From contig NC_086376.1 of assembly GCF_036588685.1 (NCBI RefSeq), positions 61,566,001 to 61,630,000 of the forward strand: a stretch of 64,000 nt of DNA, read 5' to 3'. The translations under genes and the position numbers were made by a program. The first letter of the stretch is position 1, and each line of letters begins with the position of its first letter. The stretch comes from Mytilus trossulus. Taxonomy: Eukaryota. Below, piece after piece: positions 5,125 through 60,328 of this stretch. Under the pieces are notes generated by a model. It did not search any database, was not told the DNA's origin, and saw only the letters and a program-made list of their open reading frames with translations.

Positions 5125-6319
5125 ATGACACCAATAGTATTGCTTTCCTTTGCCCTTTTCGGACTCGTTGCAACTGAGGCCGGTGAAAAAGGATACAGTC
5201 CCAAACATAACCTGAAAGCATATGGAAATCCATTCGGACCAGGTAATATTGGTAGTTTGGGATACCAAGGAAATGGTGGATTTGGATATCCGTCTTATGG
5301 TAGACCAGGATACGGATACGGGGGATATTCCAACAATGCTTATGGTTACGGTTCACCATTAAACATTGGCGGTTATAATGAATACAATGGATATAGTGTA
5401 CAAAGTGGATATCCTGGATACGGATATTTACATGGCAGAGGATTAAACGGATTCAGTGGTAATGGAAATTACGGTGTTTATGGTAAAAATATCGGACCTT
5501 TCAATGGTAATGGATTCGGTCGAGGAATTGGAGGATATAACAATTTAAATGGTTATGGAGCATATGGTATAAATGGGGCATACGGTAGTGCTAACAATTA
5601 CGGAACATATGGTATTGGTGGTTTAAATGGTTATGGATCATATGGGGGTTTGAATGGTTTCGGATCATATGGTGGTTTGAATGGCTTTGCATCAAATGGT
5701 ATTGGTGGTATTGGTAGTTTAAATGGTTTTAGATCATCTGGTTTTGGTGGTTTGAATGGTTATAAATCGTATGGTATTGGTGGTTTAAATAGTTTTGGAT
5801 CGTACAGTATTGGTGGTTTGAATGGTAATGGTATTGGTGTCAATGGTGGACTAATAAATGGAAGACGAGGTGGATTGAGCAGTTTTGGTAAATTTGGAGG
5901 TTAGTAATCCTACACGACAAAAAAGAAGAAAAAGTTGTTATTTATATGTGAAATTTTATAATAATGATACAAATACAATTGCCAACTTGTTACTTAAGAG
6001 GGTTTCATACAAAATGACATTCGTTCGTCACGTTGGTTGATTTAGATTAATGTTCCGACACACGAATATGAGTAAAAGTAAATCGTTAAACAAATCATGC
6101 CGCATGATGAATGAATTGGATAATTATTTAAGATGGGGTGGTAAATGATTTAATATTTTGTTCCATATTACATAGATATTTTTACACTAAGTCTAAAGCA
6201 TAGCAAGGTATAAACAAATGAACATTGATTTGAAAGGTTTTGAAAAATTTGAAATAAGCTTTGAAATTGTAAATTTCAACATTGTTTTCGTCATTGCAGG
6301 TAAAAAAGGAACATATTAG
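5125..6319 (+). CDS. Secreted Gly/Asn/Tyr-rich structural protein, copy 1; join(5125..5899,6300..6319), 264 aa
   Basis: Acceptor TTTCAG ends 5113. Signal peptide MTPIVLLSFALFGLVATEA, then GGLNG[FY]GSY repeats. Phase-1 donor GTTAGT at 5900; acceptor TTGCAG ends 6299; exon 3 gives GKKGTY-TAG. The ORF-track start at 4981 is intronic. Confidence 0.88.
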
Positions 6320-8769
6320 GATCCAAGAAGTCCATGAGGAATTGATGTCGATGTTTTACATTTTTTTATAATGGTTTATGAATATTAAAAAAAAATATAA
6401 ATCTCTTTCTTTTTGATTTTTCATGCACGTTTTGTTTTCTATAGTACCATTTAAAGGAAATATAGAGATATAAACAATTCAAAAAAAAAAATTGTGGACG
6501 AATTACTGCGACCAAAAAGGTAAAATGAGAAACCAAAGCCAAAAAAACATTTTCAAGTAAAAAAAACCCATGCAACATTATAAACCATACTTATCACATG
6601 GTAATGAAATTACTATTTTTGGCGAGGTTTTTCTTATTTCACAGGAGCCTGACTTTATACAGAAACTTCTGACGAAAAAAGAAAAGATTTTGGCAGTATC
6701 CGTTAACTTTTCTTTTTGCTATGTAAATGATTTTCTCTTACTGAATAATGCAATGTTTGGTTACTAAACTAAATAATGTTTTCCATTGGACTGGATACAA
6801 GATACAATTAAGTATGTCTCTTATCTTGACGTTCACATATATACACAGATTGGATTAGGCAGTATTGCTACATGGTCCTTTAGAGTCCTTATGACTAACA
6901 GGATATCACATAATTTTGGCAGTCGTTTTATTTTTATTCCATGTGAATGTAAATATGACTCTTCAAAACTTAACTGTAAAAGGTCATCCTTTTTGCAGAC
7001 TGATTGTGACGCTGAAAAATAAATTGATATATAAATAAAGGCTACAGTAGTATACTTCCTATCAAAAGTCATAAACAGATTGAGAGAAAAAAAATCCATG
7101 TCACGAAGTGCAACATAAACTGTAAGAATAAAACAACGAAACAACAGAACACTGACTTGGTTCAGGACATTTTAAGAAACAATATAAGTCTGGTAACCAT
7201 GGTTTAAATGTAAGTTGAAATCAAATTGAACTAGCTTTTGCTTTTGCGAAACACTTCTGTGTTGCACATTTCAGATGTACTTTTTATTTTTGTTTCATTA
7301 TTCTGTGATGTCGAAGAAAAGAGGACGGGATATGGCAACGAATGCTTTGCCCCAAAAAAACTTCGTTCATTCTGAGACAAGAACTGCAAACCAGAAATTA
7401 TTGCAATATTTGTAGATTTAACAAAAATGCAAGAAAATTATTGGGATTTTTGAAAAATCTCTATCAGATGTAAGAATGCACCTACTCGCATCATTCAAAT
7501 TTATAAAAACCCTGGAATAATTTTTGAACTCTAAAAAAACTCCAAAAATCTTTAAAAAAATCAAAACTGTACATAATATTTTTACACGTAACTAGAAATG
7601 ATTGGTCAACATGAAAATCAACAAAAAGATGAAAACAAAACACGAAAACCATGGTATTGGACTCAGATCTACGACGGAGTGGTTTCGTTATGATTAACAA
7701 GTTTTAATGTCTATATGATACACTAAGTTCTAATGTCAATAGTTCAAATCTACTAGAATAGTTGAAAACAAATTAAAAAATGAGAAGCATCTCATGAAAT
7801 CGAAAATTGATGAATACCAGGTGCCTCGCCAAGGTTATTTTATTTGCGGTATTATTAGACCTATATTATCTATTACTAGTATATCCTTTTATTTTAAGAT
7901 CAGTTGGAAGGGCGCGATATATTCTAGATTTATATAGGAAGATGATAGTGTTTTTCATCATTTCGATGGCCGTAAGGTGACCTGTATCTGCTCACGTCAA
8001 TATCATGTGGAATTGTCTCATTGACAATCATACCACATCTTGTTGTTTTCATTATGAATTATTCAAAGAGAAACAATAGTATACAACATGACCTGAAATT
8101 TAAAGATAAATCTTTTTTCTTGACATTCAACTTGAAAAGCACATATCTGAATTCTAACTTATTTAAATGAAAGAACTAGAATACTAGAAGAAAATCAAAA
8201 GCACAGTTGGTTTCTATAAGATTGAAAACTGCTTTAAAAACACGACTACCAAAGGTATAAAATGGTTTTCATGAGACTCCGTAAATTAGACTTGCCGGCT
8301 TTGAAACATATTCGCAAAACCACGGGTGCCACATGTGAAGCAGAATCTGTTTATCACCCCAAAGCAACTGAGAAGACCCCAGTGTGAGGTGGGATTCTTG
8401 TGGTTTAGTCCTTAGTTCCCTTTGTTGTAATTTATGTAGTATTGTTTTTCTGTTTGTCTTAGATCATCCCCATGTTTAAGGTGCCGTGTTGCTTAGTCAT
8501 TAGGTTTTATGTTGTGTGTTATGTTCTATTGTTTATCTGTTTGGTTTAATGACAACATCATGAATTGGTTGATCTTTATGATGATTGCTGAAATTAATAA
8601 ACGACACTTTTACCATGTTTGCTTAGATTACGGTTTGACATTTATGTCGTCTGTCTACTAATTAAAGAACGTGACCTCTTCTCTAATAGTACTGTGTTGT
8701 GGCTTGTGAATTTGCATTGTTATACGACGTGTTTCGGTATTTATCCATCCAACACTCATGTATCTAGTT

Positions 8770-13006: not shown

Positions 13007-13385
13007 GGGAAATTTTCCTAATACTGAATTACACTTGTATTATATGAGAATTTCAAATATTACTAATAGGTGAAAGTCCCTAAACCAAGATAACAAAGGG
13101 TAAAACAATAGCAACAAATAATTGATGACAATATTTTCTATCATTGTGGTTAACCGTTTTGTTTTTGTTTTTAGATAGATATAGGAAGATGTGGTGTGAG
13201 TGCAAATGAGACAACTCTCCATCCAAATAACAATTTATTATTTAAACCCACTTTACAGGTTTATCATTGTTAAATGTTTATTTTATAACTGATTATAACA
13301 TAATGTGTGGTCAGTGAGTATATCATATAAGACGCAGTAAACAATACGTATCACAAGGAACACACCAGCATAGATCATTACAGAG
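13007..13385 (+). promoter_or_regulatory. Promoter and non-coding exon 1 of copy 2
   Basis: GGGAAATTTTCC 13007-13018; TTTTCTATCATTGTGGTTAACC 13134-13155; TATAAG 13326-13331; donor GTAAGT at 13386. A ~65 bp retroelement tail is inserted at ~13173-13237. Confidence 0.75.
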
Positions 13386-13601
13386 GTAAGTACTTGATTT
13401 GCTTTAAAAGATATTCGTCATTCTCTCACAAAATATCTTGTTAATCGTCACAATTCGTATACATATAACTCAATATTTTATTTACAACTTTTATCTTTCA
13501 TTAACCTTCTTCAGCATTTTCGGTGATCCGTTTTCGCTTATGTTTTTACATTATTATTTTATTTTGACGAATTATTGAAAATCGTTTCAGAACCAACAAA
13601 C

Positions 13602-15109
13602 ATGACACCAATAGTATTGATTTCCTTTGCCCTATTCGGACTCGTTGCATCGGAGGCCGGTGAAAAAGGATACAGTCCCAAACATAACCTGAAAACATAT
13701 GGAAATCCATTCGGACCAGGTAATATTGGTAGTTTGGGATACCAAGGACATGGTAGATTTGGATATCCATCTTATGGTAGATCAGGATACGGATACGGGG
13801 GATATTCCAACAATGCATATGGTAACGGTTCACCATTAAACATTGGCGGATATGCTGCATACAATGGATATAGTATTCAAAGTGGATATCCTGGATACGG
13901 ATATTTACATGGCAGAGGATTGAACGGATTCAGTGGAAATAGAAATTACGGTGTTTACGGTAAAAATATCGGACCTTTCAATGGTAATGGATTCGGTCGA
14001 GGACTTGGAGGATTTAACAATTTAAATGGTTATGGAGCATATAGTATAAATGGGGCATACGGTGGTGTTAACAATTACGGAACATATGGTATTGGTGGTT
14101 TGAATGGTTTTGGATCATATGGGGGTTTAAATGGTATCGGATCATATGGTGGTTTGAACGGTTTTGCATCATATGGTATTGGTGGTATTGGTAGTTTAAA
14201 TGGTTTTGGATCATCTGGTTTTGGTGGTTTGAATGGTTATAGATCTCATGGTATTGGTGGTTTAAATAGTTTTGGATCATACAGTATTGGTGGTTTGAAT
14301 GGTAATGGTGTTGGTGTCAATGGTGGACTAATAAATGGTAGACGAGGTCTAAATGGATTGAGCAGTTTTGGTAAATTTGGAGGTAAGTAATCCTACATCA
14401 CCAAAAAGGAGAAAAAGTTGTTATTTATGTGAAATTTCATAATAATAATACAAATACAATTGCCAGCTTGTAATTTGAGAGGGTTTCAAACAAAATGACC
14501 TTCGTTCGTCACGTTGATTGATTTAGATTTATGTTCCGACACACGAATATGAGTAAAAGTAAAACGTTAAACAAATCATGCCGCATGATGAATGTATTGG
14601 ATGATTATTTAAGATGGGTTGGTAAATGGTCAAATATTTTTTTAACAATATTACATTGATTGCTTATACCTAACTCTATGGAGAGTCCGACTTTATGGAT
14701 ATTTCTACACTAAGACGTCAGCATAGCAAGATATACACAAATGAACCTTGATTTGAGAGTTTTTGATTTTTTTTTTAAATAAGCTTTGAAATTGTATGGG
14801 GCAAGTCGTTTTCCATAAACCTTGTGCATTTTTTTCGTTTGATTTGAAAGTTATTTTGATACCAATTATCTAAATCAAAGATAAAAAAACTGAAGGAAAA
14901 GTAGGAGATGTACGGAAGAATAAGAAAAGATACGAACAACCGTAGGAGACATAAAACCGAAAGTTTTTTTTTGAGCAATTTTAGCGGAATGTTCATTTGA
15001 AAAAATCTTTTGAGAATATGAACTGAAATCTTCCTTTAATAATGCAATGCAATCACCTTATTATTTGAACATTGTTTTCATCATTGCAGGTAAAAAAGGA
15101 ACATATTAG
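13602..15109 (+). CDS. Secreted Gly/Asn/Tyr-rich structural protein, copy 2; join(13602..14382,15090..15109), 266 aa
   Basis: Acceptor ends 13590; signal peptide MTPIVLISFALFGLVASEA; donor GTAAGT at 14383; exon 3 gives GKKGTY-TAG. Confidence 0.9.
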
Positions 15110-25303: not shown

Positions 25304-25619
25304 GGGAAATTTTTCTTTTACTGAATTACACTTGCATTATGAATTTCAAATATTTCAAATAGGTGAAAGTCCCTAAACCACGATAACAAAGGATAAAACA
25401 ATAGTAACAATATTTTTGATGACAATATTTTCTATCATTGTGGTTAACCGTTTTTTTTTGGTTTTTGTTTGTTAATTAAACCCACTTTACAGTTTTATCA
25501 TTGTTAAATGTTTATTTTATAACTGATTATAACATAATGTGTGGTCAGTGAGTATATCATATAAGACGCAGTAAACAATACGTATCACAAGGAACACACC
25601 AGCAGAGATCATTACAGAG
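25304..25619 (+). promoter_or_regulatory. Promoter and non-coding exon 1 of copy 3
   Basis: GGGAAATTTT at 25304; TTTTCTATCATTGTGGTTAACC 25428-25449; TATAAG 25560-25565; donor GTAAGT at 25620. Confidence 0.75.
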
Positions 25620-25840
25620 GTAAGTACTTGATTTTCTTTAAAAGATATTCGTCTTTCTCTCACAAAAGATCATGTTAATCGTCACAATTCGTATATATAT
25701 CAATATTTTATTTGCAACTTTTATCTTTCATTAATCTACTTAAGAATTTTCGGTGATCCGTTTTTGCTTATGTTTTAAAGGTTTTATTATTATAATTCTA
25801 TTTTGACGAATTATTGAAAATCGTTTCAGAACCGACAAAC

Positions 25841-27328
25841 ATGACACCAATAGTATTGATTTCTTTTGTCCTTTTCGGACTCGTTGCATCGGAGGCCGGT
25901 GAAAAAGGATACAGTCCCAAACATAACCTGAAAACATATGGAAATCCATTCGGACCAGGTAATATTGGTAGCAATGGATTTCAAGGAAATGGTGGATTTG
26001 GATATCCATCTTATGGTAGATTAGGATACGGATACGGGGGATATTCCAACAATGCTTATGGTTACGGTTCACCATTAAACATTGGCGGATATGCTGGATA
26101 CAATGGATATAGTATTCAAAGTGGATATCCTGGATACGGGTATTTACATGGCAGAGGATTGAATGGATTCAGTGGTAATGGAAATTACGGTGTTTACGGT
26201 AAAAATATCGGACCTTTCAATGGTAATGGATTCGGTACAGGACTTGGAGGATATAACAATTTGAATGGTTATGGAGCATATGGTTTGAACGGGGCATACG
26301 GTGCTAACAATTACCGAACATATGGTATTGGTGGTTTGAATGGTTTTGGTTCATACGGTGGTTTGAATGGTTTTGGATCATATGGTGGTTTGAATGGCCT
26401 TGCATCAAATGGTATTGGTGGTATTGGTAGTTTAAATGGTTTTGGATCATCTGATTTTGGTGGTTTGAATGGTTATGGATCTTATGGCATTGGTGGCTTA
26501 AATGGTTTTAGATCATACGGTATTGGTGGTATGAATGGTAATGATATTGGTGTCAATGGTGGACTACTAAATGGAAGACGAGGTCTAAGTGGATTGAGCA
26601 GTTTTGGTAAATTTGGAGGTAAGTAATCCTACATCATTAAAAAGAAGAAAAAGTTGTTATTCAAATGTGAAATTTCATAATAATGATACAAATACAACTT
26701 ATAATTTGAGAGGGTTTAAAAAAAATGACCTTAGTTCGTCACGTTGATTAATTTAGATTTATGTTCCGACAAACGAATATGAGTAAAAGTAAAACGTTAA
26801 ACAATAATGCCGCATGATGAATGACTTGGATAATTATCTAAGATTGGGTGGTAAATGGTAAATATTTTGTAACAATATTACATTGATTGCTCATACTTTA
26901 CTCTATGGAGACTTTATCGACATTTCTACATTAAATTTCAGCATAGTAAGGTGTAAACAAATGCACATTGATTTGAAAGACTTGAAAAATTTGAAATTAG
27001 CTTTGACATTGTATGGGACAAGTCGTTTTCCATAAACCCTGTTCATTCTTTTCGTTTGATTTCTAAGTTATTTAGATTAATTTGAAACCAATTATTTAAA
27101 TCAAACATGAAAAGCTGAAGGAAAAGAAGGAGATGTATGGAAGAATAAGAAAAGATAAGAACGACCGTAGATGACATAAAACTGAAAGTATGAGCATTTT
27201 TAGCGGAATGTACATTTAACAATATCTTTTGAGAATATGAACTGTAATCTTCCTTTAGTAATGCAATGCAATCACCTTATTATTTGAACATTGTTTTCAT
27301 CATTGCAGGTAAAAAAGGAACATATTAG
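25841..27328 (+). CDS. Secreted Gly/Asn/Tyr-rich structural protein, copy 3; join(25841..26618,27309..27328), 265 aa
   Basis: Acceptor ends 25829; signal peptide; donor GTAAGT at 26619; exon 3 gives GKKGTY-TAG. Confidence 0.9.
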
Positions 27329-34991: not shown

Positions 34992-35284
34992 GGGAAATTT
35001 TCCTAATACTGAATAACACTTGCTTTATGAATTTCAAATATTACTAATAGGTGAAAGTCCCTAAACCACGATAACAAAGGGTAAAACAATAGTAACAAAT
35101 ACTTGATGAAAATATTTTTTATCATTGTGGTTAACCGTTTTTTTGTTTTTTTTGTTTGTTTATCATTGTTAAATGTTTATTTTATAACTGATTATAATAT
35201 AATGTGTGGTCAGTGAGTATATTATATAAGACGCAGTAAACAATACGTATCACAAGAAACACACCAGCATAGATTATTACAGAG
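34992..35284 (+). promoter_or_regulatory. Promoter and non-coding exon 1 of copy 4
   Basis: GGGAAATTTTCC 34992-35003; TTATCATTGTGGTTAACC ending 35136; TATATAAG 35223-35230; donor GTAAGT at 35285. Confidence 0.75.
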
Positions 35285-35510
35285 GTAAGTACTTGATTTG
35301 CATTAAAAGATATTCGTCTTTCTCTCACAAAAGATCATGTTAATCGTCATAATTCGTATATATATAACTCAATATTTTATTTGCAACTTTTATCTTTCAT
35401 TAATCTACTGAAGCATTTTCGGTGATCCGTTTTTTGCTTATGTTTCAAAAGTTTTATTATTATTATTTTATTTTGACAAATTATTGAAAATCGTTTCAGA
35501 ACCAGCAAAC

Positions 35511-37797
35511 ATGACACCAATAGTATTGATTTCTTTTGTCCTTTTCGGACTCGTTGCATCGGAGGCCGGTGAAAAAGGATACAGTCCCAAACATAACCTG
35601 AAAACATATGGAAATCCATTCGGACCAGGTTTTATTGATAGTTTGGGATACCAAGGATATGGTGGATTTGGATATCCAACTTATGGTAGATCAGGATACG
35701 GATACGGGGGATATTCCAACAACGCCTATGGTTACGGTTCACCATTAAACATTGGCGGATATGCTGGATACAATGGATATAGTATTCAAAGTGGATATCC
35801 TGGATACGGATATTTACATGGCAGAGGATTGAATGGATTCAGTGGTAATGGAAATTACGGTGTTTACGGTAAAAATATCGGACCTTTCAATGGTAATGGA
35901 TTCGGTCGAGGACTTGGAGGATATAACAATTTGAATGGTTATGGAGCATATGGTTTGAACGGGGCATACGGTGCTAACAATTACCGAACATATGGTATTG
36001 GTGGTTTGAATGGTTTTGGATCATATGGGGGTTTGAATGGTTTCGGATCATATGGTGGTTTGAATGGCCTTGCATCAAATGGCATTGGTGGTATTGGTAG
36101 TTTAAATGGTTTTGGATCATCTGGTTTTGATGGTTTGAATGATTATAGATCATATGGTATTGGTGGTTTAAATGGTATTGGATCATACGGTATTGGTGGT
36201 TTGAATGGTAATGGTATTGGTGTAAATGGTGGACTAATAAATGGAAGACGAGGTCTAAGTGGATTGAGCAGTTTTGGTAAATTTGGAGGTAAGTAATCCT
36301 ACATCTCCAAAAAGAAGAAAAAGTTGTTATTTGAATGTGAAATTTCATAATAATAATACAAATACAATTGCCAACTTATAACTTGAGAGGGTTTAATACA
36401 AAATGACCTTCGTTCGTCACGTGGATTGATTTAGATTAATGTTCCGACAAACGAATATGAGTAAAAGTAAAACGTTAAACAAATCATGATGAATGAATTG
36501 GATAATTATTTAAGATAGGATGGTATATGGTAAAATATTTTGTTACTATATTGAATTGATTGCTTATTCTTTACTCTATGGAGACTTTATGGAGATTCCT
36601 ACACTAAGACTTAAGCATAGCAAGGTATTAACAAATGAACCTTGATTTGGTAAGGACCGATTTTGGCCTCAAATTTCAGGTTCATCTGACGAAAGATTTT
36701 GACCACTTTTCAAACACTTAAGTGTCTATTTCATTTGAATCAATTAGATTATGTGAAAGATTTTAACTGATATTGTCATTAAAAACGACCCGATTCAAGC
36801 TCAAATATGAAAAATCTACCAAATATGTCGAAAAATGTCACTTTTCAGATGGTTTTCGTCAAAAATGAAAATGGCCGCATCTGTGTTCATCTTCAATCTT
36901 TATATATGTTATGTATTATCATAAAATACAACATACATTTTAATATTAAGGATGAACACGAATGCGGCCACTTTTGTTTCACACGAAAACCGTCTAAAAT
37001 TTAACAAAAATGTTAGAATTGTGAAGATTTCAGAAATTAAGCATGACTTAAGGTGGTACCCAACACCTTGACTAAAATTAGTTTGGCTCGTTTAATATTC
37101 ATAAAATTTTGAATAAATATTTACTTTGACCATCTGACAAAAATATAAAAATTTCAAAAAATTTGAACCAAGCATTTTATCAGAAAAATTACACTGGTTA
37201 TATAGCAGTTTGGGAAACAGTAATTTTGATAATTGAAAAGCTTTTTATTCCCTTACAACACAACGTCATTAAAACGTTTAGCTGATATTACAGAGTTATC
37301 TCCCTGTAGTGTTAGGTACCACCTTAATGGTGCTAGTACCTGATATATGTGCATTATTTTGTCAAAAACAGCCCATATTTATGTAACAGAAGCATTCTAC
37401 TGTACAATAAATAACTAAAAGTTTACATTTTTAAAACAATTTTGTAAAACCTCTCCTTTGAAATAAGCTTTGAAATTGTATGGGACAAGTCGTTTTTCAT
37501 AAACCTTGTGCATTCTTTTTGTTTAATTTGAAAGTTATTTAGATTTATTTGATACCAGTTATCTAAATCAAACATGAAAAACTGAAGGAAAAGTAGGAGA
37601 TGTACGGAAGAATAAGAAAAGATATGAACAACCGTAGAAGACATACAACTGAAAGTTTGAGCAGTTTTAGCGCAATGTACGTTTAACAAAATCTTTTTAA
37701 AATATGAACTGGGAAGTCTTCCTTTAATAATGCAATGCAGTCACCTTTTCATTTCAACATTATTTTCATCATTGCAGGTAAAAAAGGAACATATTAG
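35511..37797 (+). CDS. Secreted Gly/Asn/Tyr-rich structural protein, copy 4; join(35511..36288,37778..37797), 265 aa
   Basis: Acceptor ends 35499; signal peptide; donor GTAAGT at 36289; exon 3 gives GKKGTY-TAG. Intron 2 is enlarged by a TE insertion. Confidence 0.9.
36650..37458. mobile_element. ~0.8 kb DNA-transposon-like insertion in intron 2 of copy 4
   Basis: Absent from intron 2 of copies 1-3, between CTTGATTTG and GAAATAAGCTTTG. It hosts a nested MITE. Confidence 0.6.
37052..37323. mobile_element. 272 bp MITE with TTAA target duplication (Kolobok-like)
   Basis: TTAA-GGTGGTACCCAACAC ... GTGTTAGGTACCACC-TTAA. Confidence 0.85.
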
Positions 37798-45005: not shown

Positions 45006-45039
45006 TCCAGTGAAAGTGAACAAATACTTTAAAATAAAT

Positions 45040-45340
45040 GAGAACTTCCCCTTAAATCTAAATTACACATGAAGTATGAATTAAATATTATTGATAGGTG
45101 AAATTCCACAAACCACAATAATTACAGCAGTTAAAACAAAGCAACACATAATTGATGACAATATTTTCGATCATTGTGGTTAACATTGTTTAAATAGACC
45201 CAACATTACAAAGGAACAACATTGTCAAATGTCTCTTCCATAACTGATTATTACAACATGTTTGGTCAATGATTCTGGTATATAAAGGACAACAATCACC
45301 AAGTAGCACAAGGAACTCGCCATCATAGAAAGACACATAG
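45040..45340 (+). promoter_or_regulatory. Promoter and non-coding exon 1 of copy 5
   Basis: GAGAACTTCCCC 45040-45051; TTTTCGATCATTGTGGTTAAC 45164-45184; TATATAAA 45279-45286; donor GTAAGT at 45341. Confidence 0.7.
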
Positions 45341-45628
45341 GTAAGTAGTTGATATACTTAAAATATATGTTTAGTGTTTGTTTGAAAAATTATATTTTTC
45401 ACATATTGCATATTTCATATTATTATTTTTTTTAAATGAATTTTTGACGACTGGAAACAATTAACCTTCTTGAATACTTTTTCAACTTACTCTGCCCCAT
45501 GGCATTCTCACTCCTCACATTTTCATTTATTTTATTATTATTTGTTGTCCGGATTGCCAATGATTTGATTTCAAATACATTATAATATAATTTGATTATT
45601 AATTAATATCGTTTCAGAACCAACAAAC

Positions 45629-46591
45629 ATGACACCAATAGTATTGATCTGTTTAGCCCTTTTTGGACTCGTGGCATCGGAGGCCGGAGAGAAAGGATAT
45701 AGTCCCAAATATAACCTGAAAACATATGGAAACCCATTTGGGCCAGGTTTGATTGGAAGTAATGCATTTCAAGGAAATGGTGGATTCGGATATCCGTCTT
45801 ATGGCAGATTAGGTTATGGATATGGAGGATTTGCCAACAACGCACATGGTTACGGTTCACCATTAAACATTGGTGGTTATTCTGGAATCAATGGCTATAG
45901 TGCACAAAGTGGATATCCTGGATACGGGTTCAAGAATGGAAGGGGTTTGAACGGATTAGGTGGTTATGGAAATTACGGCGTATACGGTAATGGAATAAGA
46001 CCTTTCATGGGTTATGGATACGATCAAGGACTTGGAGGAAATGTATATGGAGCATATGGCATTAATGGGGCATACGGTGTTAATAATCATGGATCTTATG
46101 GTATTGACGGTATTGGTAGTTTGAATGGTTTTGGATCATATGGTGGTTTGAATGGTTTTAGATCATATGGTATTGGTAGTTTAAATGGTTTTGGATCATA
46201 CGGTATTGGTGGTTTGAATGGTTTTGGTATTAACGCTAATGGTGGGCTCACTAATGGAAGAAACAGTTACAGTGGGTTTGGCAGTTTTGGTAAATTTGGA
46301 GGTAAGTAATATTAGATCGCTAACTAAAATAAAATTGAAATTTTATAAATATAATATAATAACAATTGAGAGGAAGTGTCATACACAATGGCATATCCTT
46401 TTTTGATGTAAAGATTTATTCTCTTAGTTCTTGTGCATTGTATTCTATTTTAAAAATGATTTAGATTACATATTTTCTGAATCAAAAGAGAATTTGAACT
46501 TAATTCACAACTCTTCCTTCAATAATTCAATGTAATCAACTTATCATGTAAAAATTGTTTTATCATTTCAGGTAAAAAAGGAACATATTAA
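45629..46591 (+). CDS. Secreted Gly/Asn/Tyr-rich structural protein, copy 5; join(45629..46301,46572..46591), 230 aa
   Basis: Acceptor ends 45617; signal peptide MTPIVLICLALFGLVASEA; donor GTAAGT at 46302; acceptor TTTCAG ends 46571; exon 3 gives GKKGTY-TAA. Confidence 0.9.
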
Positions 46592-49689: not shown

Positions 49690-51210
49690 TAGAGGAGTTG
49701 TCTTGCTCCATGACAAAAGTGTTGTCGTTTCAGCTGACAAAGTCTCAAACAATATTGTTTTTGTTTGCAAGAAACACTACATTGACTGCCTGATTAAGAA
49801 ACTCGGAATAAATAACACACACGGAATTCCTAAACATACACTAAGTACGCTTACGAAGCATGAAATCCTGGAAAACCACAATTCGGTTATAATTTCCTTT
49901 GGTGATAATCCAAGGGATGAAGACCAGGATCTTCCATCCTTATATTGGATTCATAAGCTTCACAAAAATCATTATAAGGAAATATGTATTGCAGGTTCTT
50001 CCAAGTGTTCCACTAAACCCTTTCTATACGTCTTACTGCCATACTCACTGCAGTTAAAGAAGAAGGACTTCAGAAATATTCTGATTTAGAAGCGGTGTTA
50101 ATCAGATGTGGATGCTGAAAAATTCAAAAGAGTTATTGTTGAATTCACAATCTCATCATTACAGAGGTGTACCATCTCACAGAGACATAACTTGGGAATG
50201 TTACCAGTACATTTACATGTGCATATTGTTTACATTTAGATCTGTGGTAACCTTTCATTCGAGGTAGGGATAGTTATGGAAATAAGTGTTGGTTTGAAAT
50301 CTGAGAAGTTCAGGGCATATAAACGTTGATAACATGCCGCACAGCCCTATATTTTGACCTTTGAAAAAAATTGTGGTGCAAATGAACTTCAATTCTAGGA
50401 TAAGATTTTTTTCAAAACTTCATAGCACAAGTGGTACAGTTTGAGCCGTAAAAGGAGTTCCTATGGAAAATTGCATTGTCAATATTTACAGAAATGCAAC
50501 CTATAACATTTTACCAACACTAAAACCTTTGAGTTTTCTACTTTGTATTCTACTATTCCACATACTAAACTCAAAGCTCGACTTAAAGAACTCCTCTTAT
50601 GTTTCTGTACTATCTCTTAATAATAATAATAGATTCAGTGGTCACTTACATTTAATATATCTAAGTGAACTTGAAATTAAAGAAACTACCGACACAGATA
50701 AATCACAGTTAGACCTTTTTTTTTCGAAATGACTACTGATGGTAGGTTAAGTACAAAAAATTATGACAAACGCGATGATATTAATTTTCCTATAGTCAAC
50801 TTTCAATTTCTATGTAGCAACATCCCATCTGCAGTATATGTATCTCAATTGATACGTTACTGATACGGTAAGTTGATTTTGTTGAACGATGAATACTGCT
50901 TTCTCGAAAGTTGCTAAGACAGGGCAATCAAATTAAGGTCATCACTCACGATTACGATGTTTGAGCTGATTGGTCATTATGACAAAAGTGTGTCAGAAAT
51001 CATATATGATATTCTTCCTCAGTCATAATAACCTTTCATCATTACCGAACTGAACAAAGAAATAACACGACGACAGCCGTATACGATGCAGGAAATGCTT
51101 ACCCTTCCAGAGCACCTAATTTCACTCCCGGTTTTTACTGGAGTTCGTGTTGTTTCTTATTTATTATTCATAACTGTTGATGTAAATGTCTTTTGGTTTT
51201 GTGAGTCTAT
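49690..51210 (+). mobile_element. Degenerate Penelope-like retroelement reverse transcriptase (pseudogenised, internally deleted, interrupted at ~50160-50520)
   Basis: Motifs in order: LHDK.VVV.ADK.SNNIVFVCKK, LPSLYWIHKLHK..IAGSSKCSTKP, GVNQMWMLKNSKELL (~50095), TFEFSTLYSTIPH (~50525), LSLNN...ELEIKETTDT, YDKRDDINFPIVNF..LCSNIP, YVSQLIRY. The structured 3' module follows at 51062-51155. Confidence 0.8.
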
Positions 51211-51361
51211 ACGTAAATTATGAGATATGAAGGAAATAATTAAAAGAGTAAATAAGATGAATAAAAATTATGTTTGAAAATTTGCACAATATTATTTGTT
51301 TTTTCAACCAATGATCTAATAAATGAAATTAACCTAATATATTGAAACCATTTTATTGCCA

Positions 51362-51576
51362 TACTGTGGATTCATTTATTTTCGTGAGTACCAATTTTCG
51401 TGGATTAAGAAAAAAACTTGCATGTTCGTGGATATTTAATTTCGTGGTTTTGACGAAGTTTGTGTACAAGCCTCAGTTAAATGAGTAGTTCGTTGAAGAT
51501 TTAATTTCGTGGTTCATCTGTACCAAACAAAATCAACGAAAATTGGTATCCAACGAATATAAATGAGTTCACAGTA
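51362..51576. mobile_element. TA-flanked MITE (Tc1/mariner-type ends)
   Basis: TACTGTGGATTCATTTATTTTCGT ... ACGAATATAAATGAGTTCACAGTA; internal TTTCGTGG repeats. Confidence 0.75.
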
Positions 51577-51788
51577 AATATCCTATATAATAAATGAACA
51601 TTTTAACAAAACAATAAAACGCGCACATTCAGCTTGTTGCCTAATCTATAAGATAACGGCGATTAACATGTTTGAAGTTTAAATAGATAAATGTTAAATA
51701 CGGTAATGAAAGGTAACAATATACGACACAAATAAATAAAAATGTAAATAGCTATAGGTGAAAGTATACGAACACCTAGATAAAATGA

Positions 51789-52086
51789 GGATTTTCCCTA
51801 AAACTAAATTACACATTTAGTTTAAATTAAATATTATTGATAGGTGAAAATCCACAAACCACGATGATTACAGCGGGTAAAACAATAGCAACAAATAATT
51901 GATGACAACATTTTCTATCATTGTGGTTAACCTTGTTTAAATAGCCCACTATTACAGATGTTAATCATTGTAAAATGTCTATTCTATAACAGATTATTAC
52001 AACATGTTTGGTCAGTTTTTATGGTATATAAAGAAAAACGATCACAAAGTATCACAAGAAACCCGCCACCATAGAAAGACACAGAG
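51789..52086 (+). promoter_or_regulatory. Promoter and non-coding exon 1 of copy 6
   Basis: GGATTTTCCC 51789-51798; TTTTCTATCATTGTGGTTAACC 51911-51932; TATATAAA 52025-52032; donor GTGAGT at 52087. Confidence 0.7.
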
Positions 52087-52692
52087 GTGAGTGTGTAGTT
52101 GATTCACTTCAAATGTAGATGTCATGTTTGTCTTACAAACAAGTCATGTCCTTTAAATTTGGTATAATTTGCACAACTTTTGCTTTACTAGATTTCGTAA
52201 ACCTTCAACCCATTTTATTTTTGCCTTCATGATAATTATATTTTAACTTTTTCTGACCCATTGCATTTCTAACTTTTTTTTTATGATTTCTCGTGTTAGC
52301 TTGAAAGGGGACACAAAGCATTTTGAATAAAGTGGATTTGACTCGTTTATTTTTAATAGAATATCTTCTTATTTCTGTGGAATTTAGAATTTTTAGAAAT
52401 TTAAAACAAATATTTACCACTCAATTTACAGGAGTAATTTCATTGGATGTATGACTGTTTGACAAACACACGTTTTTATCTTCAAGTAGCTTGATTTCTG
52501 TTAAGTTTTAGTATGTAATTGAAACGTTCAGATGATTTAAAAGAGTTAACTCTCATAGTCTGTCCCCTTTATTCACTTCAAAAGTTTGTCATTCGGATTT
52601 TAAGCTTTGAAGTTCGTCAAAGAAAGGGCAATGTTATTATTTGAATCCCTCTTTTATTATATATTATTGTTTTTTCTTTAGAACCAACACAC

Positions 52693-53837
52693 ATGACACC
52701 AATAGTATTGATTTGTTTAGCCCTTGTCGGAATTGTGGCATCGGAGGCCGGAGAAAAAGGATATAGTCCAAAATATAACCTGAAAAAGTACGGAAATCCA
52801 TTTGGACCAGGTAATATTGGTAGCAATGTATTTCAAGGAAGTGGTGGATTTGGATATCCGTCTTATGGTAGATCAGGATACGGATACAGGGGATATTCAA
52901 GCAATACATATGGTTACGGTTCACCATTAAACATTGGTGATTATGCTGGATACAATGGATATAGAATACAAAGTGGATATCCTGGATACGGGTTCATGAA
53001 CGGAAGGGGTTTGAATGGATTAGGTGGTTATGGAAATTACGGTGTTCACGGTAAAGGAATCGGACCTTTCATGGGTTATGGATTCGGTGGAGGACTTACA
53101 GGATACAACAATTTAAATGGTTATGGTGCATATGGTATTAATAGGGCATACGGTGTAAACAACTATGAATCTTATGGTATTGGTGGTTTGAATGGTTATG
53201 GATCATATAGTATTGGTGGTTTGAATGGTTTTGGATCATATGATATTGGTAGTCTGAATGGTTTTGGATCAAATGGTCGTTTAAATGGTTTTGGATCATA
53301 TGGTATTGGTGGTATAAATAGTTTAAGCGTCAATGGTGGACTCATAAATGGAAGACAAGGTCTCAGTGGATTGAGCAGTTTCGATAAATTTGGAGGTAAG
53401 TAATCCTACACCACCAAATAGAAGTATATTTTTCATTTAAATGCGAAATGATAGGAATATAATATAATAACAACTGCATAATTGTTATTTGAGAGGGAGT
53501 TTCATACAAAATGGCATATCCCTTTTGTTTTAAAGAATAATCTCGTATTCCTCATGTATTTTGAAAGTGATTTAGATTAATGGAATACCAATTCTCTGAC
53601 TAAAAAATGAAAAAAACGAGACAAAACAAAATAACAAATCAAAGCCGAGCAAGATAAATATAAACAACCAGAGGATACATACAACTAAAGGATTGATCAA
53701 TTTTAGCAAACTGTACATTGAACTAAATATTTGGAGAATATGCAATTACTTCACAGTTCTATCCTCAAAAATACAAAACAATCAACTGATCATGTCAACA
53801 TTGTTTTCTCATTTCAGGTAAAAAAGGAACATATTAG
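52693..53837 (+). CDS. Secreted Gly/Asn/Tyr-rich structural protein, copy 6; join(52693..53395,53818..53837), 240 aa
   Basis: Acceptor TTTAG ends 52681; signal peptide; donor GTAAGT at 53396; acceptor TTTCAG ends 53817; exon 3 gives GKKGTY-TAG. Confidence 0.9.
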
Positions 53838-55716
53838 AATCCAAGGAGGCAATGAAGAATTGATGGCGGTTTTCTACAAATTTTTTATTTTGTTTATAAT
53901 GGTTTATGAATATTAAAATGAATATTAAATAATTCATTAGTACTTGATTGTTTTTGCAAGTTCTGTTTTCTCAAGCTAAAACACATCAAACGAATGAATA
54001 ATAACGGTCATATTCTGACATGGTACAGGCATTTTCATATATGGAGAAAATGGTGGAGTTAACTGGTTTTATAGTTAGCTCAACTTGTCACTTGTATGAT
54101 AGTCGCATCAAATTTCATTATCTTTACAACAATGTGTGAACATAACAAACACACGTAAAACATTATAGGCAAACTTATAAAAAATAGGGAAACAGCGGTC
54201 AACATTGTGTTATAATCTTATAAACTCAAACAAATATGTAACAAGAGGCACAAAAAGGCATAAAACCTAAGCATATAATAAAAAATAAACGCAAGAATAC
54301 AATTAACTACAATTGCACGACCACACAATGACGGGATGTATTTGTACGTTTACAGAGTCACGTCATATGTATCAAAGAAACACAAAAAAGCATAAAGACA
54401 AAGCACATTAGCAAAAATGAAAGACACATATACAAAATTATCATCAGACAATAACACAATTACGGGATGTATAAATACAAAGTCACGTCATATGCATCAA
54501 AGAAACATAGGAAATTGTAACTGATGACTTATTATGAATTTCGTTGGCAAAATGACTTAAACACAAATTTTCTCAATCAGTCTGGTTGGTCACATGCTTT
54601 TAAACCAACATGGACGGCAATACTATGATAAGATATCCTGTTTGTTACAAGGTATCAAAATATCACGATTTGGAAAAGGAAAAAAATTTGGAAATAGGTC
54701 ACACTCATTTACACTAAAAAGCAGACAACTTTATTTTATATTCTATTAGATTAAATTGCTGAAAAAAGCTAACGAGTGAAGACATGAGACCGTTGTTTCG
54801 GTCAAACAATGCATAATGCTGACCAGAACTTTTGAGAAGATATTTTAACATATAGATATAAATGAAAACCAATACAATAAAACACTTTAACGCAAACAAA
54901 GACTCAGACCTATTTGGACACGAAGCTCTAAAACAAGGGATACTTTGCAAAACTATTGCTCATATTCAAATACTGATTCCGACTGTAAAGACACCAATCC
55001 CATGGTACATAAATGTGGAAAGTTTATACATAAAAGTTGAGGTTTTCATTTGTATCACTGTGTTATTTAGGGTGCATTCAAAGATTCAAGTCTTGAAGTC
55101 TTCCAAAACATAAATATACCTACGTAATCATGAGAGGTAAATAGCTTCTTTTTTGTAAGTCTTGACAAACACCAAGAACATAGAGGTAAAATGATAAAAA
55201 CAACGTAGTATTTAAAAATGAAAGTGTTTTACGACAATGAAAAGACTATAAGATATTTTGGAATAAAAAGAAGATAACTACAGGATTGGTGAACAGTAGT
55301 TTACAGATGTTGAATTCTCATAAATATATTTAAAAATACAAATGAAGACAAAATACGTTCAGAAAAATCGCTTGAACTCTAAACCTGGTAAGTGTTTCCT
55401 CATATGCATGGATCACTTGTCAGATGATACATACAATTCTAGATAATTATTTTTCTTCGAAATCACCAATATCAAATACATAACGATTGTTCTAGTATAT
55501 AAAGATCAAGTACATGGAAAGATGTCTGAAGTGAGATTCGACAAATTCCCGTTGTCAAGTTTACTGACTTGTATGGTTGCGCATCTGGTACAAGAAAAGT
55601 GGTATCGTTAATTTCATTAGCTTATGGCACCCAATGGCATAAAATTATAAATCTACCCTAAAACACCAAAAAAGTCACATTTTGGTACGAAAATGGGTCT
55701 ACTTCTAAAGCCTTAC

Positions 55717-57564: not shown

Positions 57565-57879
57565 GTAAGTTTAAGAATTTATATGCGACGTTCTAATTCA
57601 TATTATCGCATATTTGGAATGTTTATTATATTCATTGATATTGCTACGATAAATGCTATAAAAACAATAGATAACAACGTAAAAATTGATTTAATTACAT
57701 TTGCATTAGCATAATGTTCATCTTTCAGCTACACATTAAACTGTTTTATTATTTTGTAGCTTTGTATATATACTTTGATGTTTTTAAATTTCTGTTTTCA
57801 CAATAAGATTTAATGTTCTGCATAGTACAACACATGTTTATTGAAATATTATGAATTATACTTTTAGAACAAACCAACA

Positions 57880-60328
57880 ATGTCACTTAAAGCTTACCTG
57901 TGTTTGTCGCTCGTCGGACTAGTAGCTGCAGAAGCTGGGAAAAAGGGATATAGTACCAAGTATGACTTGAAGACATATGGGAATCCGTTAGGACCTTTTC
58001 TTGGTGGCAATAGATTTCAAGGAAATAACGGCGCTGGATATCCTTTGAATGGTGTATCTGGATATGGAAATGGTATCTATGCAAACAACTTTTATGGATT
58101 AGGTTCACATTTACACTATGGCGGCCATGTCGGATACAACAACTATGGTACCCAAGATGGATTTCTTGGAAACAGATTAATGAACGGAAGAGGTTTGAAT
58201 GTATGAGGTGGTTATCGGAATTACGGTGTTTATAATAATGGAGTTATGCCATTCAATGGATATGGATTTGGTCAAGGACTTGGAGGATATGGAGGGTATA
58301 ACAATTTGATTGATTCTAAAGCATTTGGCATTGGTCGTGTAAATGGGTATGAATCATATGGTATCAGTGGAATGAAGGGTTACGGAGCATATGGTGTGGG
58401 TGGTTTTGGTGAAATTGGTGGCATGTATGGTTATGGATCATATGGTATTGGAATTGGTGGTTTAAATGGTAATGGAGCAAATGGTTTGGGGTGGTTTGAA
58501 TGATTATGGATCACATAGTATTGGTGGATTCAGAAACGGAAAATACGGATACAGTGGTGTTGGTGGTTTTGGTAAATTTGGATGTAAGTTGTTTCATATA
58601 ATACAATTTAAAAAAATGCACCTTTTTTGGGTTACAATTTTCATATTCAACTTTAATATTTACTTATATTTCTTCATATTATAAACGCTTAAAGTGTGAT
58701 GCCATTAAAAGAAATAACAACAAACAATGTTACCGGCACTAAACTTTTATTTATACTGCACTCGTTCTATTTGAGCAGTTAAAATGCGCTGACCGTATAT
58801 TTCTATGTCATATACAGTCACTGACCTGATATCACTTTTCCTCATGAATATTCAAATAGAAATTGTCGAAATTATAATTAATTATGCATACGACCTCATC
58901 AACCTGGTCTTGTTTCCAATGTAAACAACGATGCGTTTAACAACTCAAACTTGTTTCTTTTACAATTTTTGGGAAAAATATTTCACTTATTAATATTTTT
59001 TGTTTGAAACCTATAAATCATTATGTTTTATGTTAATTGTTGATATTCAAGTCTGTAAACAAACAAATTCGTTCACCTTTGATAGCGGTTTTCAACAGGT
59101 AATGATGTACATTTCATCGTTTTGTAAATTTCTCCGCCTGTGTAATATGAGGCCTTTTTAAATGGGGATCTTTCCAATATTTAAATCAAATAAATATTGA
59201 CACACTTAACAACAATTGAAAATGTTTTTTTTTAGATTGCAGTATAAAGACAATAATATTCGGCCCGAAACGGGGAAAATGCTCGGCACAGCCTCGCATT
59301 TCCCTGTTTCTAAGCCTCATCCTTATATTGTTGATATGTCAAGTCAATGCACTATTATTGTCTATTTTCACGAAGATTTCTCTTCAATATATGCGAACTA
59401 TTTGAGGGGCTAAATTCTCACAGCGTGGGGGTAGTGTGACAAATAATCAAAACATCGATTGTTCAATAAAGCACCAAGCATTAAATAAGAAAAACCGAAC
59501 AATAGTAAACAGAATACAGAGTATGTCACGTAAATTTATTATCATTTAAAAAAAACAAGAACTTGCAAATAAAAAAAGATAATATTACAATTACATCACA
59601 ATAACATAAAAAAGAAAATGTTATTAATACTCATCAAGCAAATAAACATAATAGCAATAGTTAGATTGTATTTTTGCAATTACTTAGATCTATATGTACA
59701 TCTTATGTAATATATGATTGTTAGAACTTTTTTTTATTTCAATAAGGAAAATGGTCTGAAAAAAACACAACACGTAAAAATGAAAATATACACATGAACG
59801 GAAGAATAAGAAAACTTATGTATACACCAAGTACTCTAGCTTATATTGATTCGAGTAACATAAATTATTTTGTTTTATATATTCAAATGACATCACAATA
59901 CTATACATAGAAAAGAAATAATGTAAATTGATCAGCTGTATAAATATTCATTGTCAAAATCAACATAATATAAAAAAATTGGAGTAGTATGTGCGTTTTT
60001 TTTGTAATTACACAGGTTTATATAGCTGGTGTTATATCTGCTTGTTTAAATAATTTACTACAAATTGAGAGAATATTTGGTAAAGCAAAACATAAAAAAA
60101 TAACAAAAAAAGCCCCAAAAAACAAACTATCACATAAAAATTCAAAGATATAGATATACGGAATAAAAAAAAAAGATCTTTATGCTCATCAAGTATATAC
60201 TTTATACTTAAACAACATGAAATTCAATCCCAACCGTATGTTAAAGAATATTTATGCACAAATTTTATGACACTTCTATAAATTAATCCTTTTCTATTTA
60301 TTTTGCAGGTAAAAAAGGAACATATTAG
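57880..60328 (+). pseudogene. Divergent Gly/Asn/Tyr-rich protein gene, copy 7, disrupted; exons 57880..58583 and 60309..60328
   Basis: Signal peptide MSLKAYLCLSLVGLVAAEA then GKKGY. In-frame TGA at 58204-58206 (TTA Leu in copies 5 and 6). Frameshift at the G-run 58488-58491; homology resumes to FGKFG. Donor GTAAGT at 58584; exon 3 intact. Confidence 0.8.

What the first reader, a model, noticed from the sequence alone, without database searches (positions are those of the whole stretch)
5125..60328. Seven-gene tandem array of an apparently unnamed secreted Gly/Asn/Tyr-rich protein family
Seen: seven co-oriented paralogues with identical exon structure. Each has a 19-aa signal peptide, a conserved head (G[EK]KGYSxK[HY][ND]LKxYGNP[FL]GP), a Tyr/Gly-rich middle, a variable number of G(I)GGLNG[FY]GSY repeats and a basic tail. 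The mature region has no Cys and very few acidic residues. Divergence grades from near-identical (1-4) through 5 and 6 to 7. Established: the architecture resembles pearl-oyster shematrins, and the composition resembles Mytilus byssal thread matrix proteins. I do not recognise this sequence as a named protein. Inference: a dosage-amplified biomaterial protein system (shell matrix, periostracum or byssus). This is the best candidate for an undescribed system in the window.
Basis: partly seen in the sequence, partly recalled or inferred. Interest (0 to 1): 0.78.

Follow-up and report, generated by a model that had tools for sequence, protein, structure and literature searches.

The report
Mussel glycine-tyrosine-asparagine secreted protein gene array
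A mussel chromosome carries a real, transcribed tandem array of genes for small, basic, disordered secreted proteins rich in glycine, tyrosine and asparagine; they are probably building blocks of a cross-linked material such as the shell skin, but the tissue that makes them is still untested.

Summary
Six are intact. The seventh carries a TGA and a frameshift.

Each gene has a short TATA-driven 5'UTR exon (seen for six of seven), one large exon holding nearly all the coding sequence, and a 20-nt final coding piece giving the tail KKGTY.

The array is larger than reported: 16 loci on C4. These are nine in the plus-strand array, six in a diverged mirror array about 260 kb upstream, and one 2.7 Mb away.

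Contigs of all four public runs laid cover the large exon of copy 6 but not its intron or flanks, which indicates spliced RNA.

Relatives occur only in mussels and are unnamed or auto-named. Pfam finds nothing and AlphaFold2 finds no fold.

A more distant paralogue on the same chromosome shares the signal peptide and head but has shematrin-type Gly/Tyr repeats ending GYKKY.

Best reading: a mytilid branch of shematrin-like, tyrosine-cross-linkable matrix proteins, most likely made by the mantle. Tissue and material remain untested.

The parts
4868..4928 (+). copy 1: TATA-like box (4868) and short non-coding exon 1 ending at donor AG|GTAAG (4928)
   Evidence: conserved block shared by copies 1-6. 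The transcription start is inferred, not mapped.
5114..5899 (+). copy 1 exon 2: 11 nt of 5'UTR, ATG at 5125, nearly the whole CDS, donor G|GTTAGT
6300..6319 (+). copy 1 exon 3 coding part: GT AAA AAA GGA ACA TAT TAG = (G)KKGTY-stop
13325..13385 (+). copy 2: TATA-like box and non-coding exon 1
13591..14382 (+). copy 2 exon 2 (ATG 13602)
15090..15109 (+). copy 2 exon 3 coding part (KKGTY-stop)
25559..25619 (+). copy 3: TATA-like box and non-coding exon 1
25830..26618 (+). copy 3 exon 2 (ATG 25841)
27309..27328 (+). copy 3 exon 3 coding part (KKGTY-stop)
35224..35284 (+). copy 4: TATA-like box and non-coding exon 1
35500..36288 (+). copy 4 exon 2 (ATG 35511)
37778..37797 (+). copy 4 exon 3 coding part (KKGTY-stop)
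45280..45340 (+). copy 5: TATA box and non-coding exon 1
45618..46301 (+). copy 5 exon 2 (ATG 45629)
46572..46591 (+). copy 5 exon 3 coding part (KKGTY-stop, TAA)
52026..52086 (+). copy 6: TATA box and non-coding exon 1
   Evidence: There is small contig depth in bin 51900-52099 in 2 of 4 runs.
52682..53395 (+). copy 6 exon 2 (ATG 52693), covered by contigs of 4 of 4 runs laid
53818..53837 (+). copy 6 exon 3 coding part (KKGTY-stop). The 3'UTR probably runs to about 54461.
57868..58583 (+). copy 7 exon 2 (ATG 57880), broken by an in-frame TGA at 58204-58206 and a +1 frameshift near 58483-58490
   Evidence: CDS length 724, not a multiple of 3
60309..60328 (+). copy 7 exon 3 coding part (KKGTY-stop), still intact

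Best explanation
The window holds part of a 16-locus, Mytilidae-restricted gene family. Its products are small secreted proteins: precursors of 230-266 codons, mature about 21-24 kDa.

After a 19-residue signal peptide comes a conserved 20-residue head (GEKGYSPKxNLKxYGNPFGP). This is followed by an intrinsically disordered, basic Gly/Tyr/Asn body. Nearly every Tyr in the body sits next to Gly, and Asn-Gly is frequent. The body carries a variable number of GGLNGFGSY units and ends in a Lys-Lys-Gly-Thr-Tyr tail encoded by a separate final exon.

Inferred mechanism:
- The monomers are secreted in bulk; tandem and inverted duplication supply gene dosage.
- The monomers stay soluble because they are cationic and disordered.
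- They are then locked into an insoluble extracellular material by tyrosinase/DOPA-quinone chemistry on the many exposed Tyr, with the few Lys clustered at both ends as partners.
- The head serves as a shared recognition or sorting module.

The most likely source is the mantle edge, and the most likely material is periostracum or shell organic framework. This makes the family a mytilid, Asn-rich branch of shematrin-like proteins.

Shown: genes, splicing, transcription, composition, disorder, restriction to mussels, and paralogy with a shematrin-type gene.

Inferred: secretion, cross-linking, tissue and material.
For: Gene family and structure.

Conserved promoter/TATA plus 5'UTR exon in 6 of 7 copies.

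Purifying selection: dN/dS 0.22-0.58 in 15 of 15 pairs.

Transcription and splicing:
- Contigs of 4 of 4 runs laid lie on copy-6 exon 2 (52679/52685 to 53399).
- Depth is zero or near zero in the intron bin 53500-53699, the flank bins 51700-51899 and 52100-52299, and 48500-49499 (one bin in X4 excepted).
- Some pieces have 0-4 other letters per 149-283 nt.
- Pieces start within 3 nt of the predicted acceptor and end at the donor, with letters running on unlike the intron.

Composition. Tyr is next to Gly in 23-28 of 25-30 Tyr, and there are 11-19 Asn-Gly per copy.

Disorder: AlphaFold2 mean pLDDT 34.5, 0 of 260 residues at 70 or above, and the only helix is the signal peptide.

No known domain: Pfam gives 0 families for 3 of 3 proteins.

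Taxonomic range: only mussel relatives, and only 11 hits at E<=1e-3 in 1.84 billion representatives.

Link to shematrin-type proteins:
- The paralogue L028 on the same contig has the same signal peptide and head: 20 of 50 identical, E 2e-10.
- Its body has GGYGG/GnY repeats and its C-terminus is GYKKY.
- The shematrin signature is Gly-Tyr repeats plus C-terminal RKKKY/RRKKY-type ends, and a GGGYGGYGI-repeat transcript exists in M. edulis mantle (passages of PMC3896809).

Link to periostracin: periostracin of M. edulis is basic, 20 kDa, 10% Tyr and 2.2% DOPA, and has never been sequenced (passage of PMC3821031).
Against: - Tissue was not determined. Run labels are coded and the runs are only guessed to be RNA.
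- Periostracin has 55% Gly, against 31-34% here.
- The passages read of the M. galloprovincialis shell-layer proteome name no Gly/Tyr/Asn-rich protein.
- No deposited, named M. coruscus or M. californianus shell or byssus protein falls in the family. Lys/Arg-poor, cross-linked proteins are easily missed by tryptic proteomics, however, and periostracum is usually stripped first.
- Gly/Tyr/Asn richness is also the stated hallmark of byssal TMP-1.
- The strict shematrin C-terminal signature is not met (KKGTY).
- No named shematrin was reached by the profile search.
- Copies 1-6 themselves are absent from the protein database searched, so they may be weakly expressed or simply unannotated.
Confidence: 0.45

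Rival explanations
1. Byssal thread matrix-type proteins. On this reading the family is made in the foot (collagen gland) and forms a viscoelastic Gly/Tyr/Asn-rich matrix between the collagen fibres of the byssal thread. Asn-Gly deamidation and DOPA would tune its properties.
For: - Composition is Gly/Tyr/Asn-rich and basic, pI 9.4-9.7. TMP-1 is a thread-core DOPA protein of pI 9.5 (table in PMC9999432).
- There are 11-19 Asn-Gly sites per copy.
- One GYGYGGYSNNAYGYG stretch resembles the TMP-1 consensus GYGYGNYGYGY quoted in PMC6474901.
Against: - TMP-1 is 56.5 kDa, against 21-24 kDa here.
- The repeat here is GGLNGFGSY, not the TMP-1 consensus.
- The profile search of all lengths found no larger relative.
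- No named foot or byssal protein of M. californianus or M. coruscus sits in the family's clusters.
- The nearest distinct paralogue is shematrin-like.
- The two key papers (Sagert and Waite 2009; DeMartini et al. 2017) were not held, so the TMP comparison rests on second-hand passages.
Confidence: 0.2
2. Secreted proteins of another tissue. One possibility is glycine-rich cationic defence peptides or proteins of haemocytes or gill ('acanthoscurrin-like'). Another is a structural protein of gill, gut or egg coverings.
For: - RefSeq auto-names one sister copy 'acanthoscurrin-2-like'.
- A gill-specific secreted glycine-rich protein of unknown function exists in the mussel Mytilisepta virgata (passages of PMC5549309).
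- The proteins are cationic and Cys-free.
Against: - At 21-24 kDa with 11-13% Tyr, 11-13% Asn and long tandem repeats, the proteins are unlike short Gly-rich antimicrobial peptides.
- The auto-names rest on composition only: Pfam gives 0 hits and Atlas scores are 0.81, below the 0.9 lead level.
- The primers of the M. virgata gill protein encode residues not typical of this family. That is my reading of the printed primers and is weak evidence.
Confidence: 0.15
3. Decaying or silent repeat array: ORFs kept by chance in a low-complexity tandem repeat, with no functional product.
For: - Copy 7 here and one copy of the mirror array are broken.
- Copies 1-6 are missing from the protein database.
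Against: - Six intact ORFs of 230-266 codons have conserved splice sites, a TATA block and an identical terminal exon.
- dN/dS is below 1 in 15 of 15 pairs.
- Exon-only contig cover is seen in 4 of 4 runs.
- Orthologous arrays exist in M. coruscus and other Mytilus.
Confidence: 0.03

Closest known systems
Shematrins (and KRMPs) of pearl oysters (Pinctada)
   Same: - Signal peptide followed by a Cys-free, basic Gly/Tyr-rich repetitive body.
- Hydrophobic residues punctuate the Gly runs.
- A short basic C-terminal tail ends in Tyr.
- A multigene family.
- A paralogue with the same head (L028) has a shematrin-type body and ends GYKKY.
- The signature is taken from passages of PMC3896809.
   Different: - Asn-rich (11-13%), with a GGLNGFGSY unit instead of GnY.
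- The tail is KKGTY, not R/K3-4Y, and sits on its own exon.
- It has a conserved head that no named shematrin matched in the profile search.
- Mantle expression and shell location are untested here.
Thread matrix protein TMP-1 of Mytilus byssus
   Same: Gly/Tyr/Asn-rich and basic, pI about 9.5.
   Different: - Less than half the mass: 21-24 kDa against 56.5 kDa.
- A different repeat.
- No detectable sequence relation in an all-length profile search.
- The primary paper was not available.
Periostracin of Mytilus edulis periostracum (protein known only by composition)
   Same: Basic, about 20 kDa, about 10% Tyr (plus DOPA), from the same genus (passage of PMC3821031).
   Different: Periostracin has 55% Gly, against 31-34% here. 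It has no sequence to compare. Other Gly-richer secreted families in this genome (scan notes) may fit it better.
Prisilkin-39, keratin-associated protein 19-2, acanthoscurrin-2 (names given automatically to sister copies in RefSeq)
   Same: Gly/Tyr-rich low-complexity composition.
   Different: The names come from compositional best hits. There is no shared domain and no significant profile hit to such proteins.

Membership tests
Shematrin | Secreted, Gly-Tyr-rich repetitive domain (GnY followed by a hydrophobic residue) | tested here: inconclusive
   Gly is 31-34% and Tyr 11-13%, and 23-28 of 25-30 Tyr are next to Gly. But the repeat unit is GGLNGFGSY with 11-13% Asn, not GnY. The feature is as stated in PMC3896809.
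Shematrin | C-terminal signature RKKKY / RRKKY / RRRKY / IRRKK / PRKKY | tested here: not met
   All 7 copies end (G)KKGTY. Two Lys and a terminal Tyr are present, but not the stated motif. The paralogue L028 ends GYKKY.
Shematrin | Detectable sequence homology to Pinctada shematrins | tested here: not met
   The profile search of 1.84 billion representatives gave 11 hits, none of them a named shematrin. A 25-residue head could escape detection. No shematrin sequence was compared directly.
Shematrin | Expression in mantle edge and presence in the prismatic shell layer | not testable with these tools
   Run tissue labels are coded and supplements of proteome papers are closed.
Thread matrix protein TMP-1 | About 56.5 kDa, pI 9.5 thread-core DOPA protein | tested here: not met
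   pI 9.4-9.7 fits, but the mass of 21-24 kDa does not (table of PMC9999432).
Thread matrix protein TMP-1 | Consensus repeat GYGYGNYGYGY | tested here: not met
   The repeat here is GGLNGFGSY, 3-6 units per copy. Only one GYGYGGYSNNAYGYG stretch is similar. The consensus is as quoted in PMC6474901.
Thread matrix protein TMP-1 | Made in the foot collagen gland and found in byssal threads | not testable with these tools
   No tissue information was available.
Periostracin | Basic, about 20 kDa | tested here: met
   pI 9.4-9.7. The mature exon-2 part is 20.8-24.2 kDa, against the passage of PMC3821031.
Periostracin | 55% Gly, 10% Tyr, 2.2% DOPA | tested here: not met
   Tyr 11-13% fits Tyr plus DOPA. 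Gly 31-34% is far below 55%.
Periostracin | Extracted from periostracum | not testable with these tools
   No periostracum proteome or tissue-labelled RNA was available.

The most novel reading that the evidence does not exclude
These genes, or this head-bearing superfamily as a whole, encode the never-sequenced periostracin-class precursors of the mussel periostracum. These would be basic, roughly 20-kDa Gly/Tyr proteins that are tanned by DOPA-quinone chemistry. On this reading the conserved signal-plus-head module is a common 'address' that different low-complexity bodies (Asn-rich LNGFGSY type, shematrin GnY type) share so as to be co-secreted and co-assembled in the periostracal groove.
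Probability: 0.17. Interest if true: 0.7.

Novelty: new member of a known kind. Interest (0 to 1): 0.45.

Why it matters
Mussel shell skin, shell framework and byssus are models for tough, water-cured protein materials. Several of their classical components, periostracin among them, are known only by amino-acid composition.

This locus provides:
- complete gene models, promoters and copy-specific sequences for an abundant-looking, unstudied family;
- a link between that family and shematrin-type proteins through a shared N-terminal module;
- a case of how tandem plus inverted duplication and repeat-number change diversify such proteins.

It makes the tissue and material question directly testable.

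Tried and rejected
- Pfam on 3 proteins: 0 families.
- ESM Atlas on copy 3 and on L028: best scores 0.81 and 0.82, below the level of a lead.
- AlphaFold2: no fold, so no fold search was run.
- Rfam gathering scan of the whole window: 0 matches.
- Full-text searches found 0 papers for the head motif and 0 papers for five M. coruscus accessions and one M. californianus accession.
- Other literature searches gave background only. I found no paper that describes this family. All 10 searches are used, and supplements were closed, so shell or byssus proteome lists in supplementary tables may hold it unseen.
- A homology search with L028 was swamped by low-complexity candidates: 2 unnamed hits among 8000 scored.
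- A haplotig or assembly-artefact explanation of the mirror array was rejected. Pairwise DNA identity of matched 3.5-kb loci is 82-96%, copy numbers differ (9 against 6), and different copies are broken.
- The idea that the M. virgata gill glycine-rich protein is the same family was considered. It could be weighed only from printed primers and was left as a weak rival.

Full report
**What is there.**

The window (64,000 nt, GC 31.7%, no N) lies at G000:C4:61566001-61630000 of a 1.30-Gb assembly. Seven + strand ORFs of one family are present, with ATGs at 5125, 13602, 25841, 35511, 45629, 52693 and 57880.

Copies 2-6 are 91, 90, 91, 76 and 78% identical to copy 1. At the DNA level, whole 8-12-kb units are duplicated among copies 1-3: 50-90% of a unit aligns at 89-92%. 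Only the genes align for copies 5 and 6, and copy 7 shares no unit-level match at the blastn threshold used (E<=1e-20). The 3' half of every copy is built of 27/33-nt tandem units.

**Gene structure.**

- In 7 of 7 copies the long ORF runs into a consensus donor, TTTGGAG|GTAAGT (GTTAGT in copy 1, T|GTAAGT in copy 7).
- At 270-1725 nt downstream lies the acceptor cag|GTAAAAAAGGAACATATTA(G/A). It completes a Gly codon and adds KKGTY-stop.
- Counted this way, the coding lengths are 795, 801, 798, 798, 693 and 723 nt for copies 1-6, all multiples of three. Copy 7 is 724 nt.
All searches used exon 2 alone.
- Database relatives modelled from RNA end ..FGKFGGKKGTY, which independently supports the splice.
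- Upstream, 7 of 7 copies have an acceptor 11-12 nt before the ATG.
- Copies 1-6 share a conserved block with a TATA box placed 60 nt before a donor AG|GTAAG, which implies a non-coding first exon of roughly 30 nt. Its start is inferred, not mapped.
- Copy 7 has TTA>TGA at 58204-58206 and one extra G near 58483-58490, judged against intact paralogues. It is a pseudogene unless these are assembly errors.

**The proteins.**

- A 19-residue hydrophobic leader ends ..VASEA. The cleavage site is inferred from the small residues at -3 and -1; no predictor was available.
- The head is G(E/K)KGYSxK(H/Y)(N/D)LKxYGNP(F/L)GP.
- The body is Gly 31-34%, Asn 11-13%, Tyr 11-13% and Ser 8-10%, with D+E 1-5, K+R 10-13 and no Cys or Trp. 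pI is 9.4-9.7 and mass 20.8-24.2 kDa.
- Of 25-30 Tyr per copy, 23-28 are next to Gly. There are 11-19 Asn-Gly sites and 3-6 GGLNGFGSY-type units per copy.
- Pfam finds nothing for 3 of 3 proteins.
- AlphaFold2 with an 18-row alignment gives mean pLDDT 34.5 and no residue at 70 or above. Its only helix is the signal peptide. The mature protein is best described as intrinsically disordered.
- In the ungapped first 130 codons, dN/dS is 0.22-0.58 in 15 of 15 pairs.

**Extent in the genome.**

Protein and profile searches of the whole assembly find 16 head-bearing loci, all on contig C4:

- nine in the + array (the seven here plus 61631564 and 61639790);
- six on the - strand at 61235796-61306630, in mirror order of subtypes;
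- one at 64293422.

Matched loci of the two arrays are 82-96% identical over about 3.5 kb. The outermost pair is 96.3% and the innermost 90.8%. One mirror copy is broken. I read this as an old inverted segmental duplication followed by independent turnover, not a retained haplotig.

A first-stage note of this scan (s1-826815) had already flagged that mirror array, without follow-up.

**Species.**

The exon of the copy at 61639790 is identical to the RefSeq M. trossulus protein XP_063434120.1 up to the splice. The next copy matches LOC134714065 of M. trossulus. The genome is therefore most probably Mytilus trossulus.

**Expression.**

- The index search found six 2019 runs of one coded organism in two studies, each holding 5-6% of the words of 45400-53900. 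The tool only guesses that they are RNA.
- I laid four of them on 48500-54499 at 80% likeness.
- In 4 of 4 runs, contigs lie on copy-6 exon 2, from 52679-52686 to 53399.
- Depth is zero in bins 51700-51899 and 52100-52299, and in 48500-49499 (one bin of X4 excepted). In bin 53500-53699 (intron 2) it is zero in three runs and 0.31 in X5.
- Pieces with 0 of 165, 1 of 149, 3 of 221, 4 of 208 and 4 of 283 other letters show copy 6 or its allele.
- Pieces with 10-14% other letters are paralogues.
- Two records carry 103 and 144 letters before the acceptor, and two carry 15 letters beyond the donor.
- Small depth appears in 51900-52099, where exon 1 lies.
- This exon-only pattern is what spliced RNA gives and what genomic DNA does not.
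- Contigs cannot rank expression, and tissue is unknown because the labels are coded.

**Relatives.**

- The search with copy 3 gave 13 proteins at E<=1e-3 among 6803 candidates. Eleven come from five Mytilus species and two are unnamed ENA sequences.
- Names are 'unnamed', 'uncharacterized', 'keratin-associated protein 19-2-like', 'prisilkin-39-like' and 'acanthoscurrin-2-like'.
- Five M. coruscus members have near-consecutive accessions on one 1.8-Mb scaffold, so the array is conserved there.
- Copies 1-6 themselves are not in the database. Their only close relative is M. coruscus P0001, at 74% identity.
- A profile search of 1.84 billion representatives of all lengths gave 11 hits. Three are family representatives, seven are short unnamed fragments with the same head, and one is a spurious bacterial protein.
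- No named shematrin, prisilkin, KRMP or TMP appeared.

**The link to shematrin-type proteins.**

One of the fragments (P0020) led to a further locus on the same contig, 64127179-64127394 on the - strand. Its 185-codon ORF starts with the same leader and head: 20 of 50 identical to copy 5, E 2e-10. It then continues as GGYGG/GnY repeats punctuated by Ile/Val and ends GYKKY. Logan-derived proteins P0029 and P0030 match it.

According to passages of PMC3896809, this is the shematrin pattern: Gly-Tyr repeats followed by a hydrophobic residue, with C-terminal RKKKY-type ends. The same passages report a GGGYGGYGI-repeat transcript in M. edulis mantle.

The window family therefore looks like an Asn-rich sister of a shematrin-type gene that shares its N-terminal module.

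**Function.**

Shown: secreted-type leader, disorder, cationic charge, exposed Tyr, end-clustered Lys, dosage amplification and transcription.

Inferred: bulk secretion of soluble monomers that are insolubilised by tyrosinase/DOPA-quinone cross-linking.

For the material I favour mantle products (periostracum or shell framework), for two reasons:
- the shematrin-type paralogue;
- periostracin of M. edulis is basic, 20 kDa, 10% Tyr plus 2.2% DOPA, and unsequenced (passage of PMC3821031).

Against this:
- periostracin has 55% Gly;
- the passages I read of the M. galloprovincialis shell-layer proteome list Ala/Gly-, Gly/Arg/Ser- and Phe/Gly/Val-rich novel proteins but none like this (PMC4517812);
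- the P. viridis shell paper gives only generic Gly-rich entries (PMC6641155).

The byssus rival rests on composition. TMP-1 is thread-core, pI 9.5 and 56.5 kDa (table of PMC9999432), and its consensus is GYGYGNYGYGY (passage of PMC6474901). Mass and repeat differ here, and no sequence relation was found. That TMPs are a Gly/Tyr/Asn-rich set prone to deamidation is my recollection of Sagert and Waite 2009. I could not read that paper or DeMartini et al. 2017.

A gill-specific secreted Gly-rich protein in M. virgata (passages of PMC5549309) keeps a non-mantle, non-foot origin open.

**Verdict.**

This is a new, lineage-restricted member of the known class of molluscan Gly/Tyr-rich secreted matrix proteins, and several similar families sit in this genome (scan notes). 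Interest is moderate. It would rise if the family proved to be the periostracin-class precursor.

Noticed in passing
G000:C4:61235796-61306630 (- strand) and C4:61631564-61640455 (+ strand), outside the window; loci L002, L008-L013, L010, L015: The array continues with two more + copies. It is also mirrored by six - strand copies about 260 kb upstream, in the same subtype order. The outermost pair is 96.3% identical and the innermost 90.8%. This looks like an old inverted segmental duplication.
   Followed up: partly
L028 (G000:C4:64125679-64128894), ORF L028:1150-1704 on the - strand: A 185-codon gene with the same signal peptide and head as the window family. Its body has shematrin-type GGYGG/GnY repeats and its C-terminus is GYKKY. 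Matching transcript-derived proteins are P0029 and P0030.
   Followed up: partly
window 51360-51576: A short interspersed repeat with reiterated ATTTTCGTGG-like motifs. In the contig sets of all four runs laid it has depth in the thousands, with many internal deletion joints. It is probably a very abundant, transcribed mobile or satellite-like element.
   Followed up: no
window 45100-45260 and equivalents upstream of copies 1-6 (alignment A3): A promoter block with a nearly invariant stretch (TTGATGACAA..ATCATTGTGGTTAAC) about 150-200 nt before the TATA box. It is a candidate shared cis-regulatory element of the family. Copy 7 and its subtype lack it.
   Followed up: no
L015 (G000:C4:61630079-61633669): The genomic ORF of the copy just after the window has 285 codons. 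RefSeq isoforms X2 and X3 of the same gene have 221 and 204 residues and lack in-frame blocks of repeats. This could be either real repeat-internal splicing or read-mapping artefacts in repeats.
   Followed up: no
window 49664-50089 (+) and 170-460 (+): A 141-codon ORF between copies 5 and 6 looks like a fragment of a mobile-element protein and has low contig depth. A 96-codon ORF at the window start looks like a phosphatase-type exon. Neither was examined further.
   Followed up: no
window 61812-62498: An earlier first-stage note (s1-827320) reports hammerhead retrozyme units here. My Rfam scan of the whole window at gathering threshold returned 0 matches. I did not look further.
   Followed up: no
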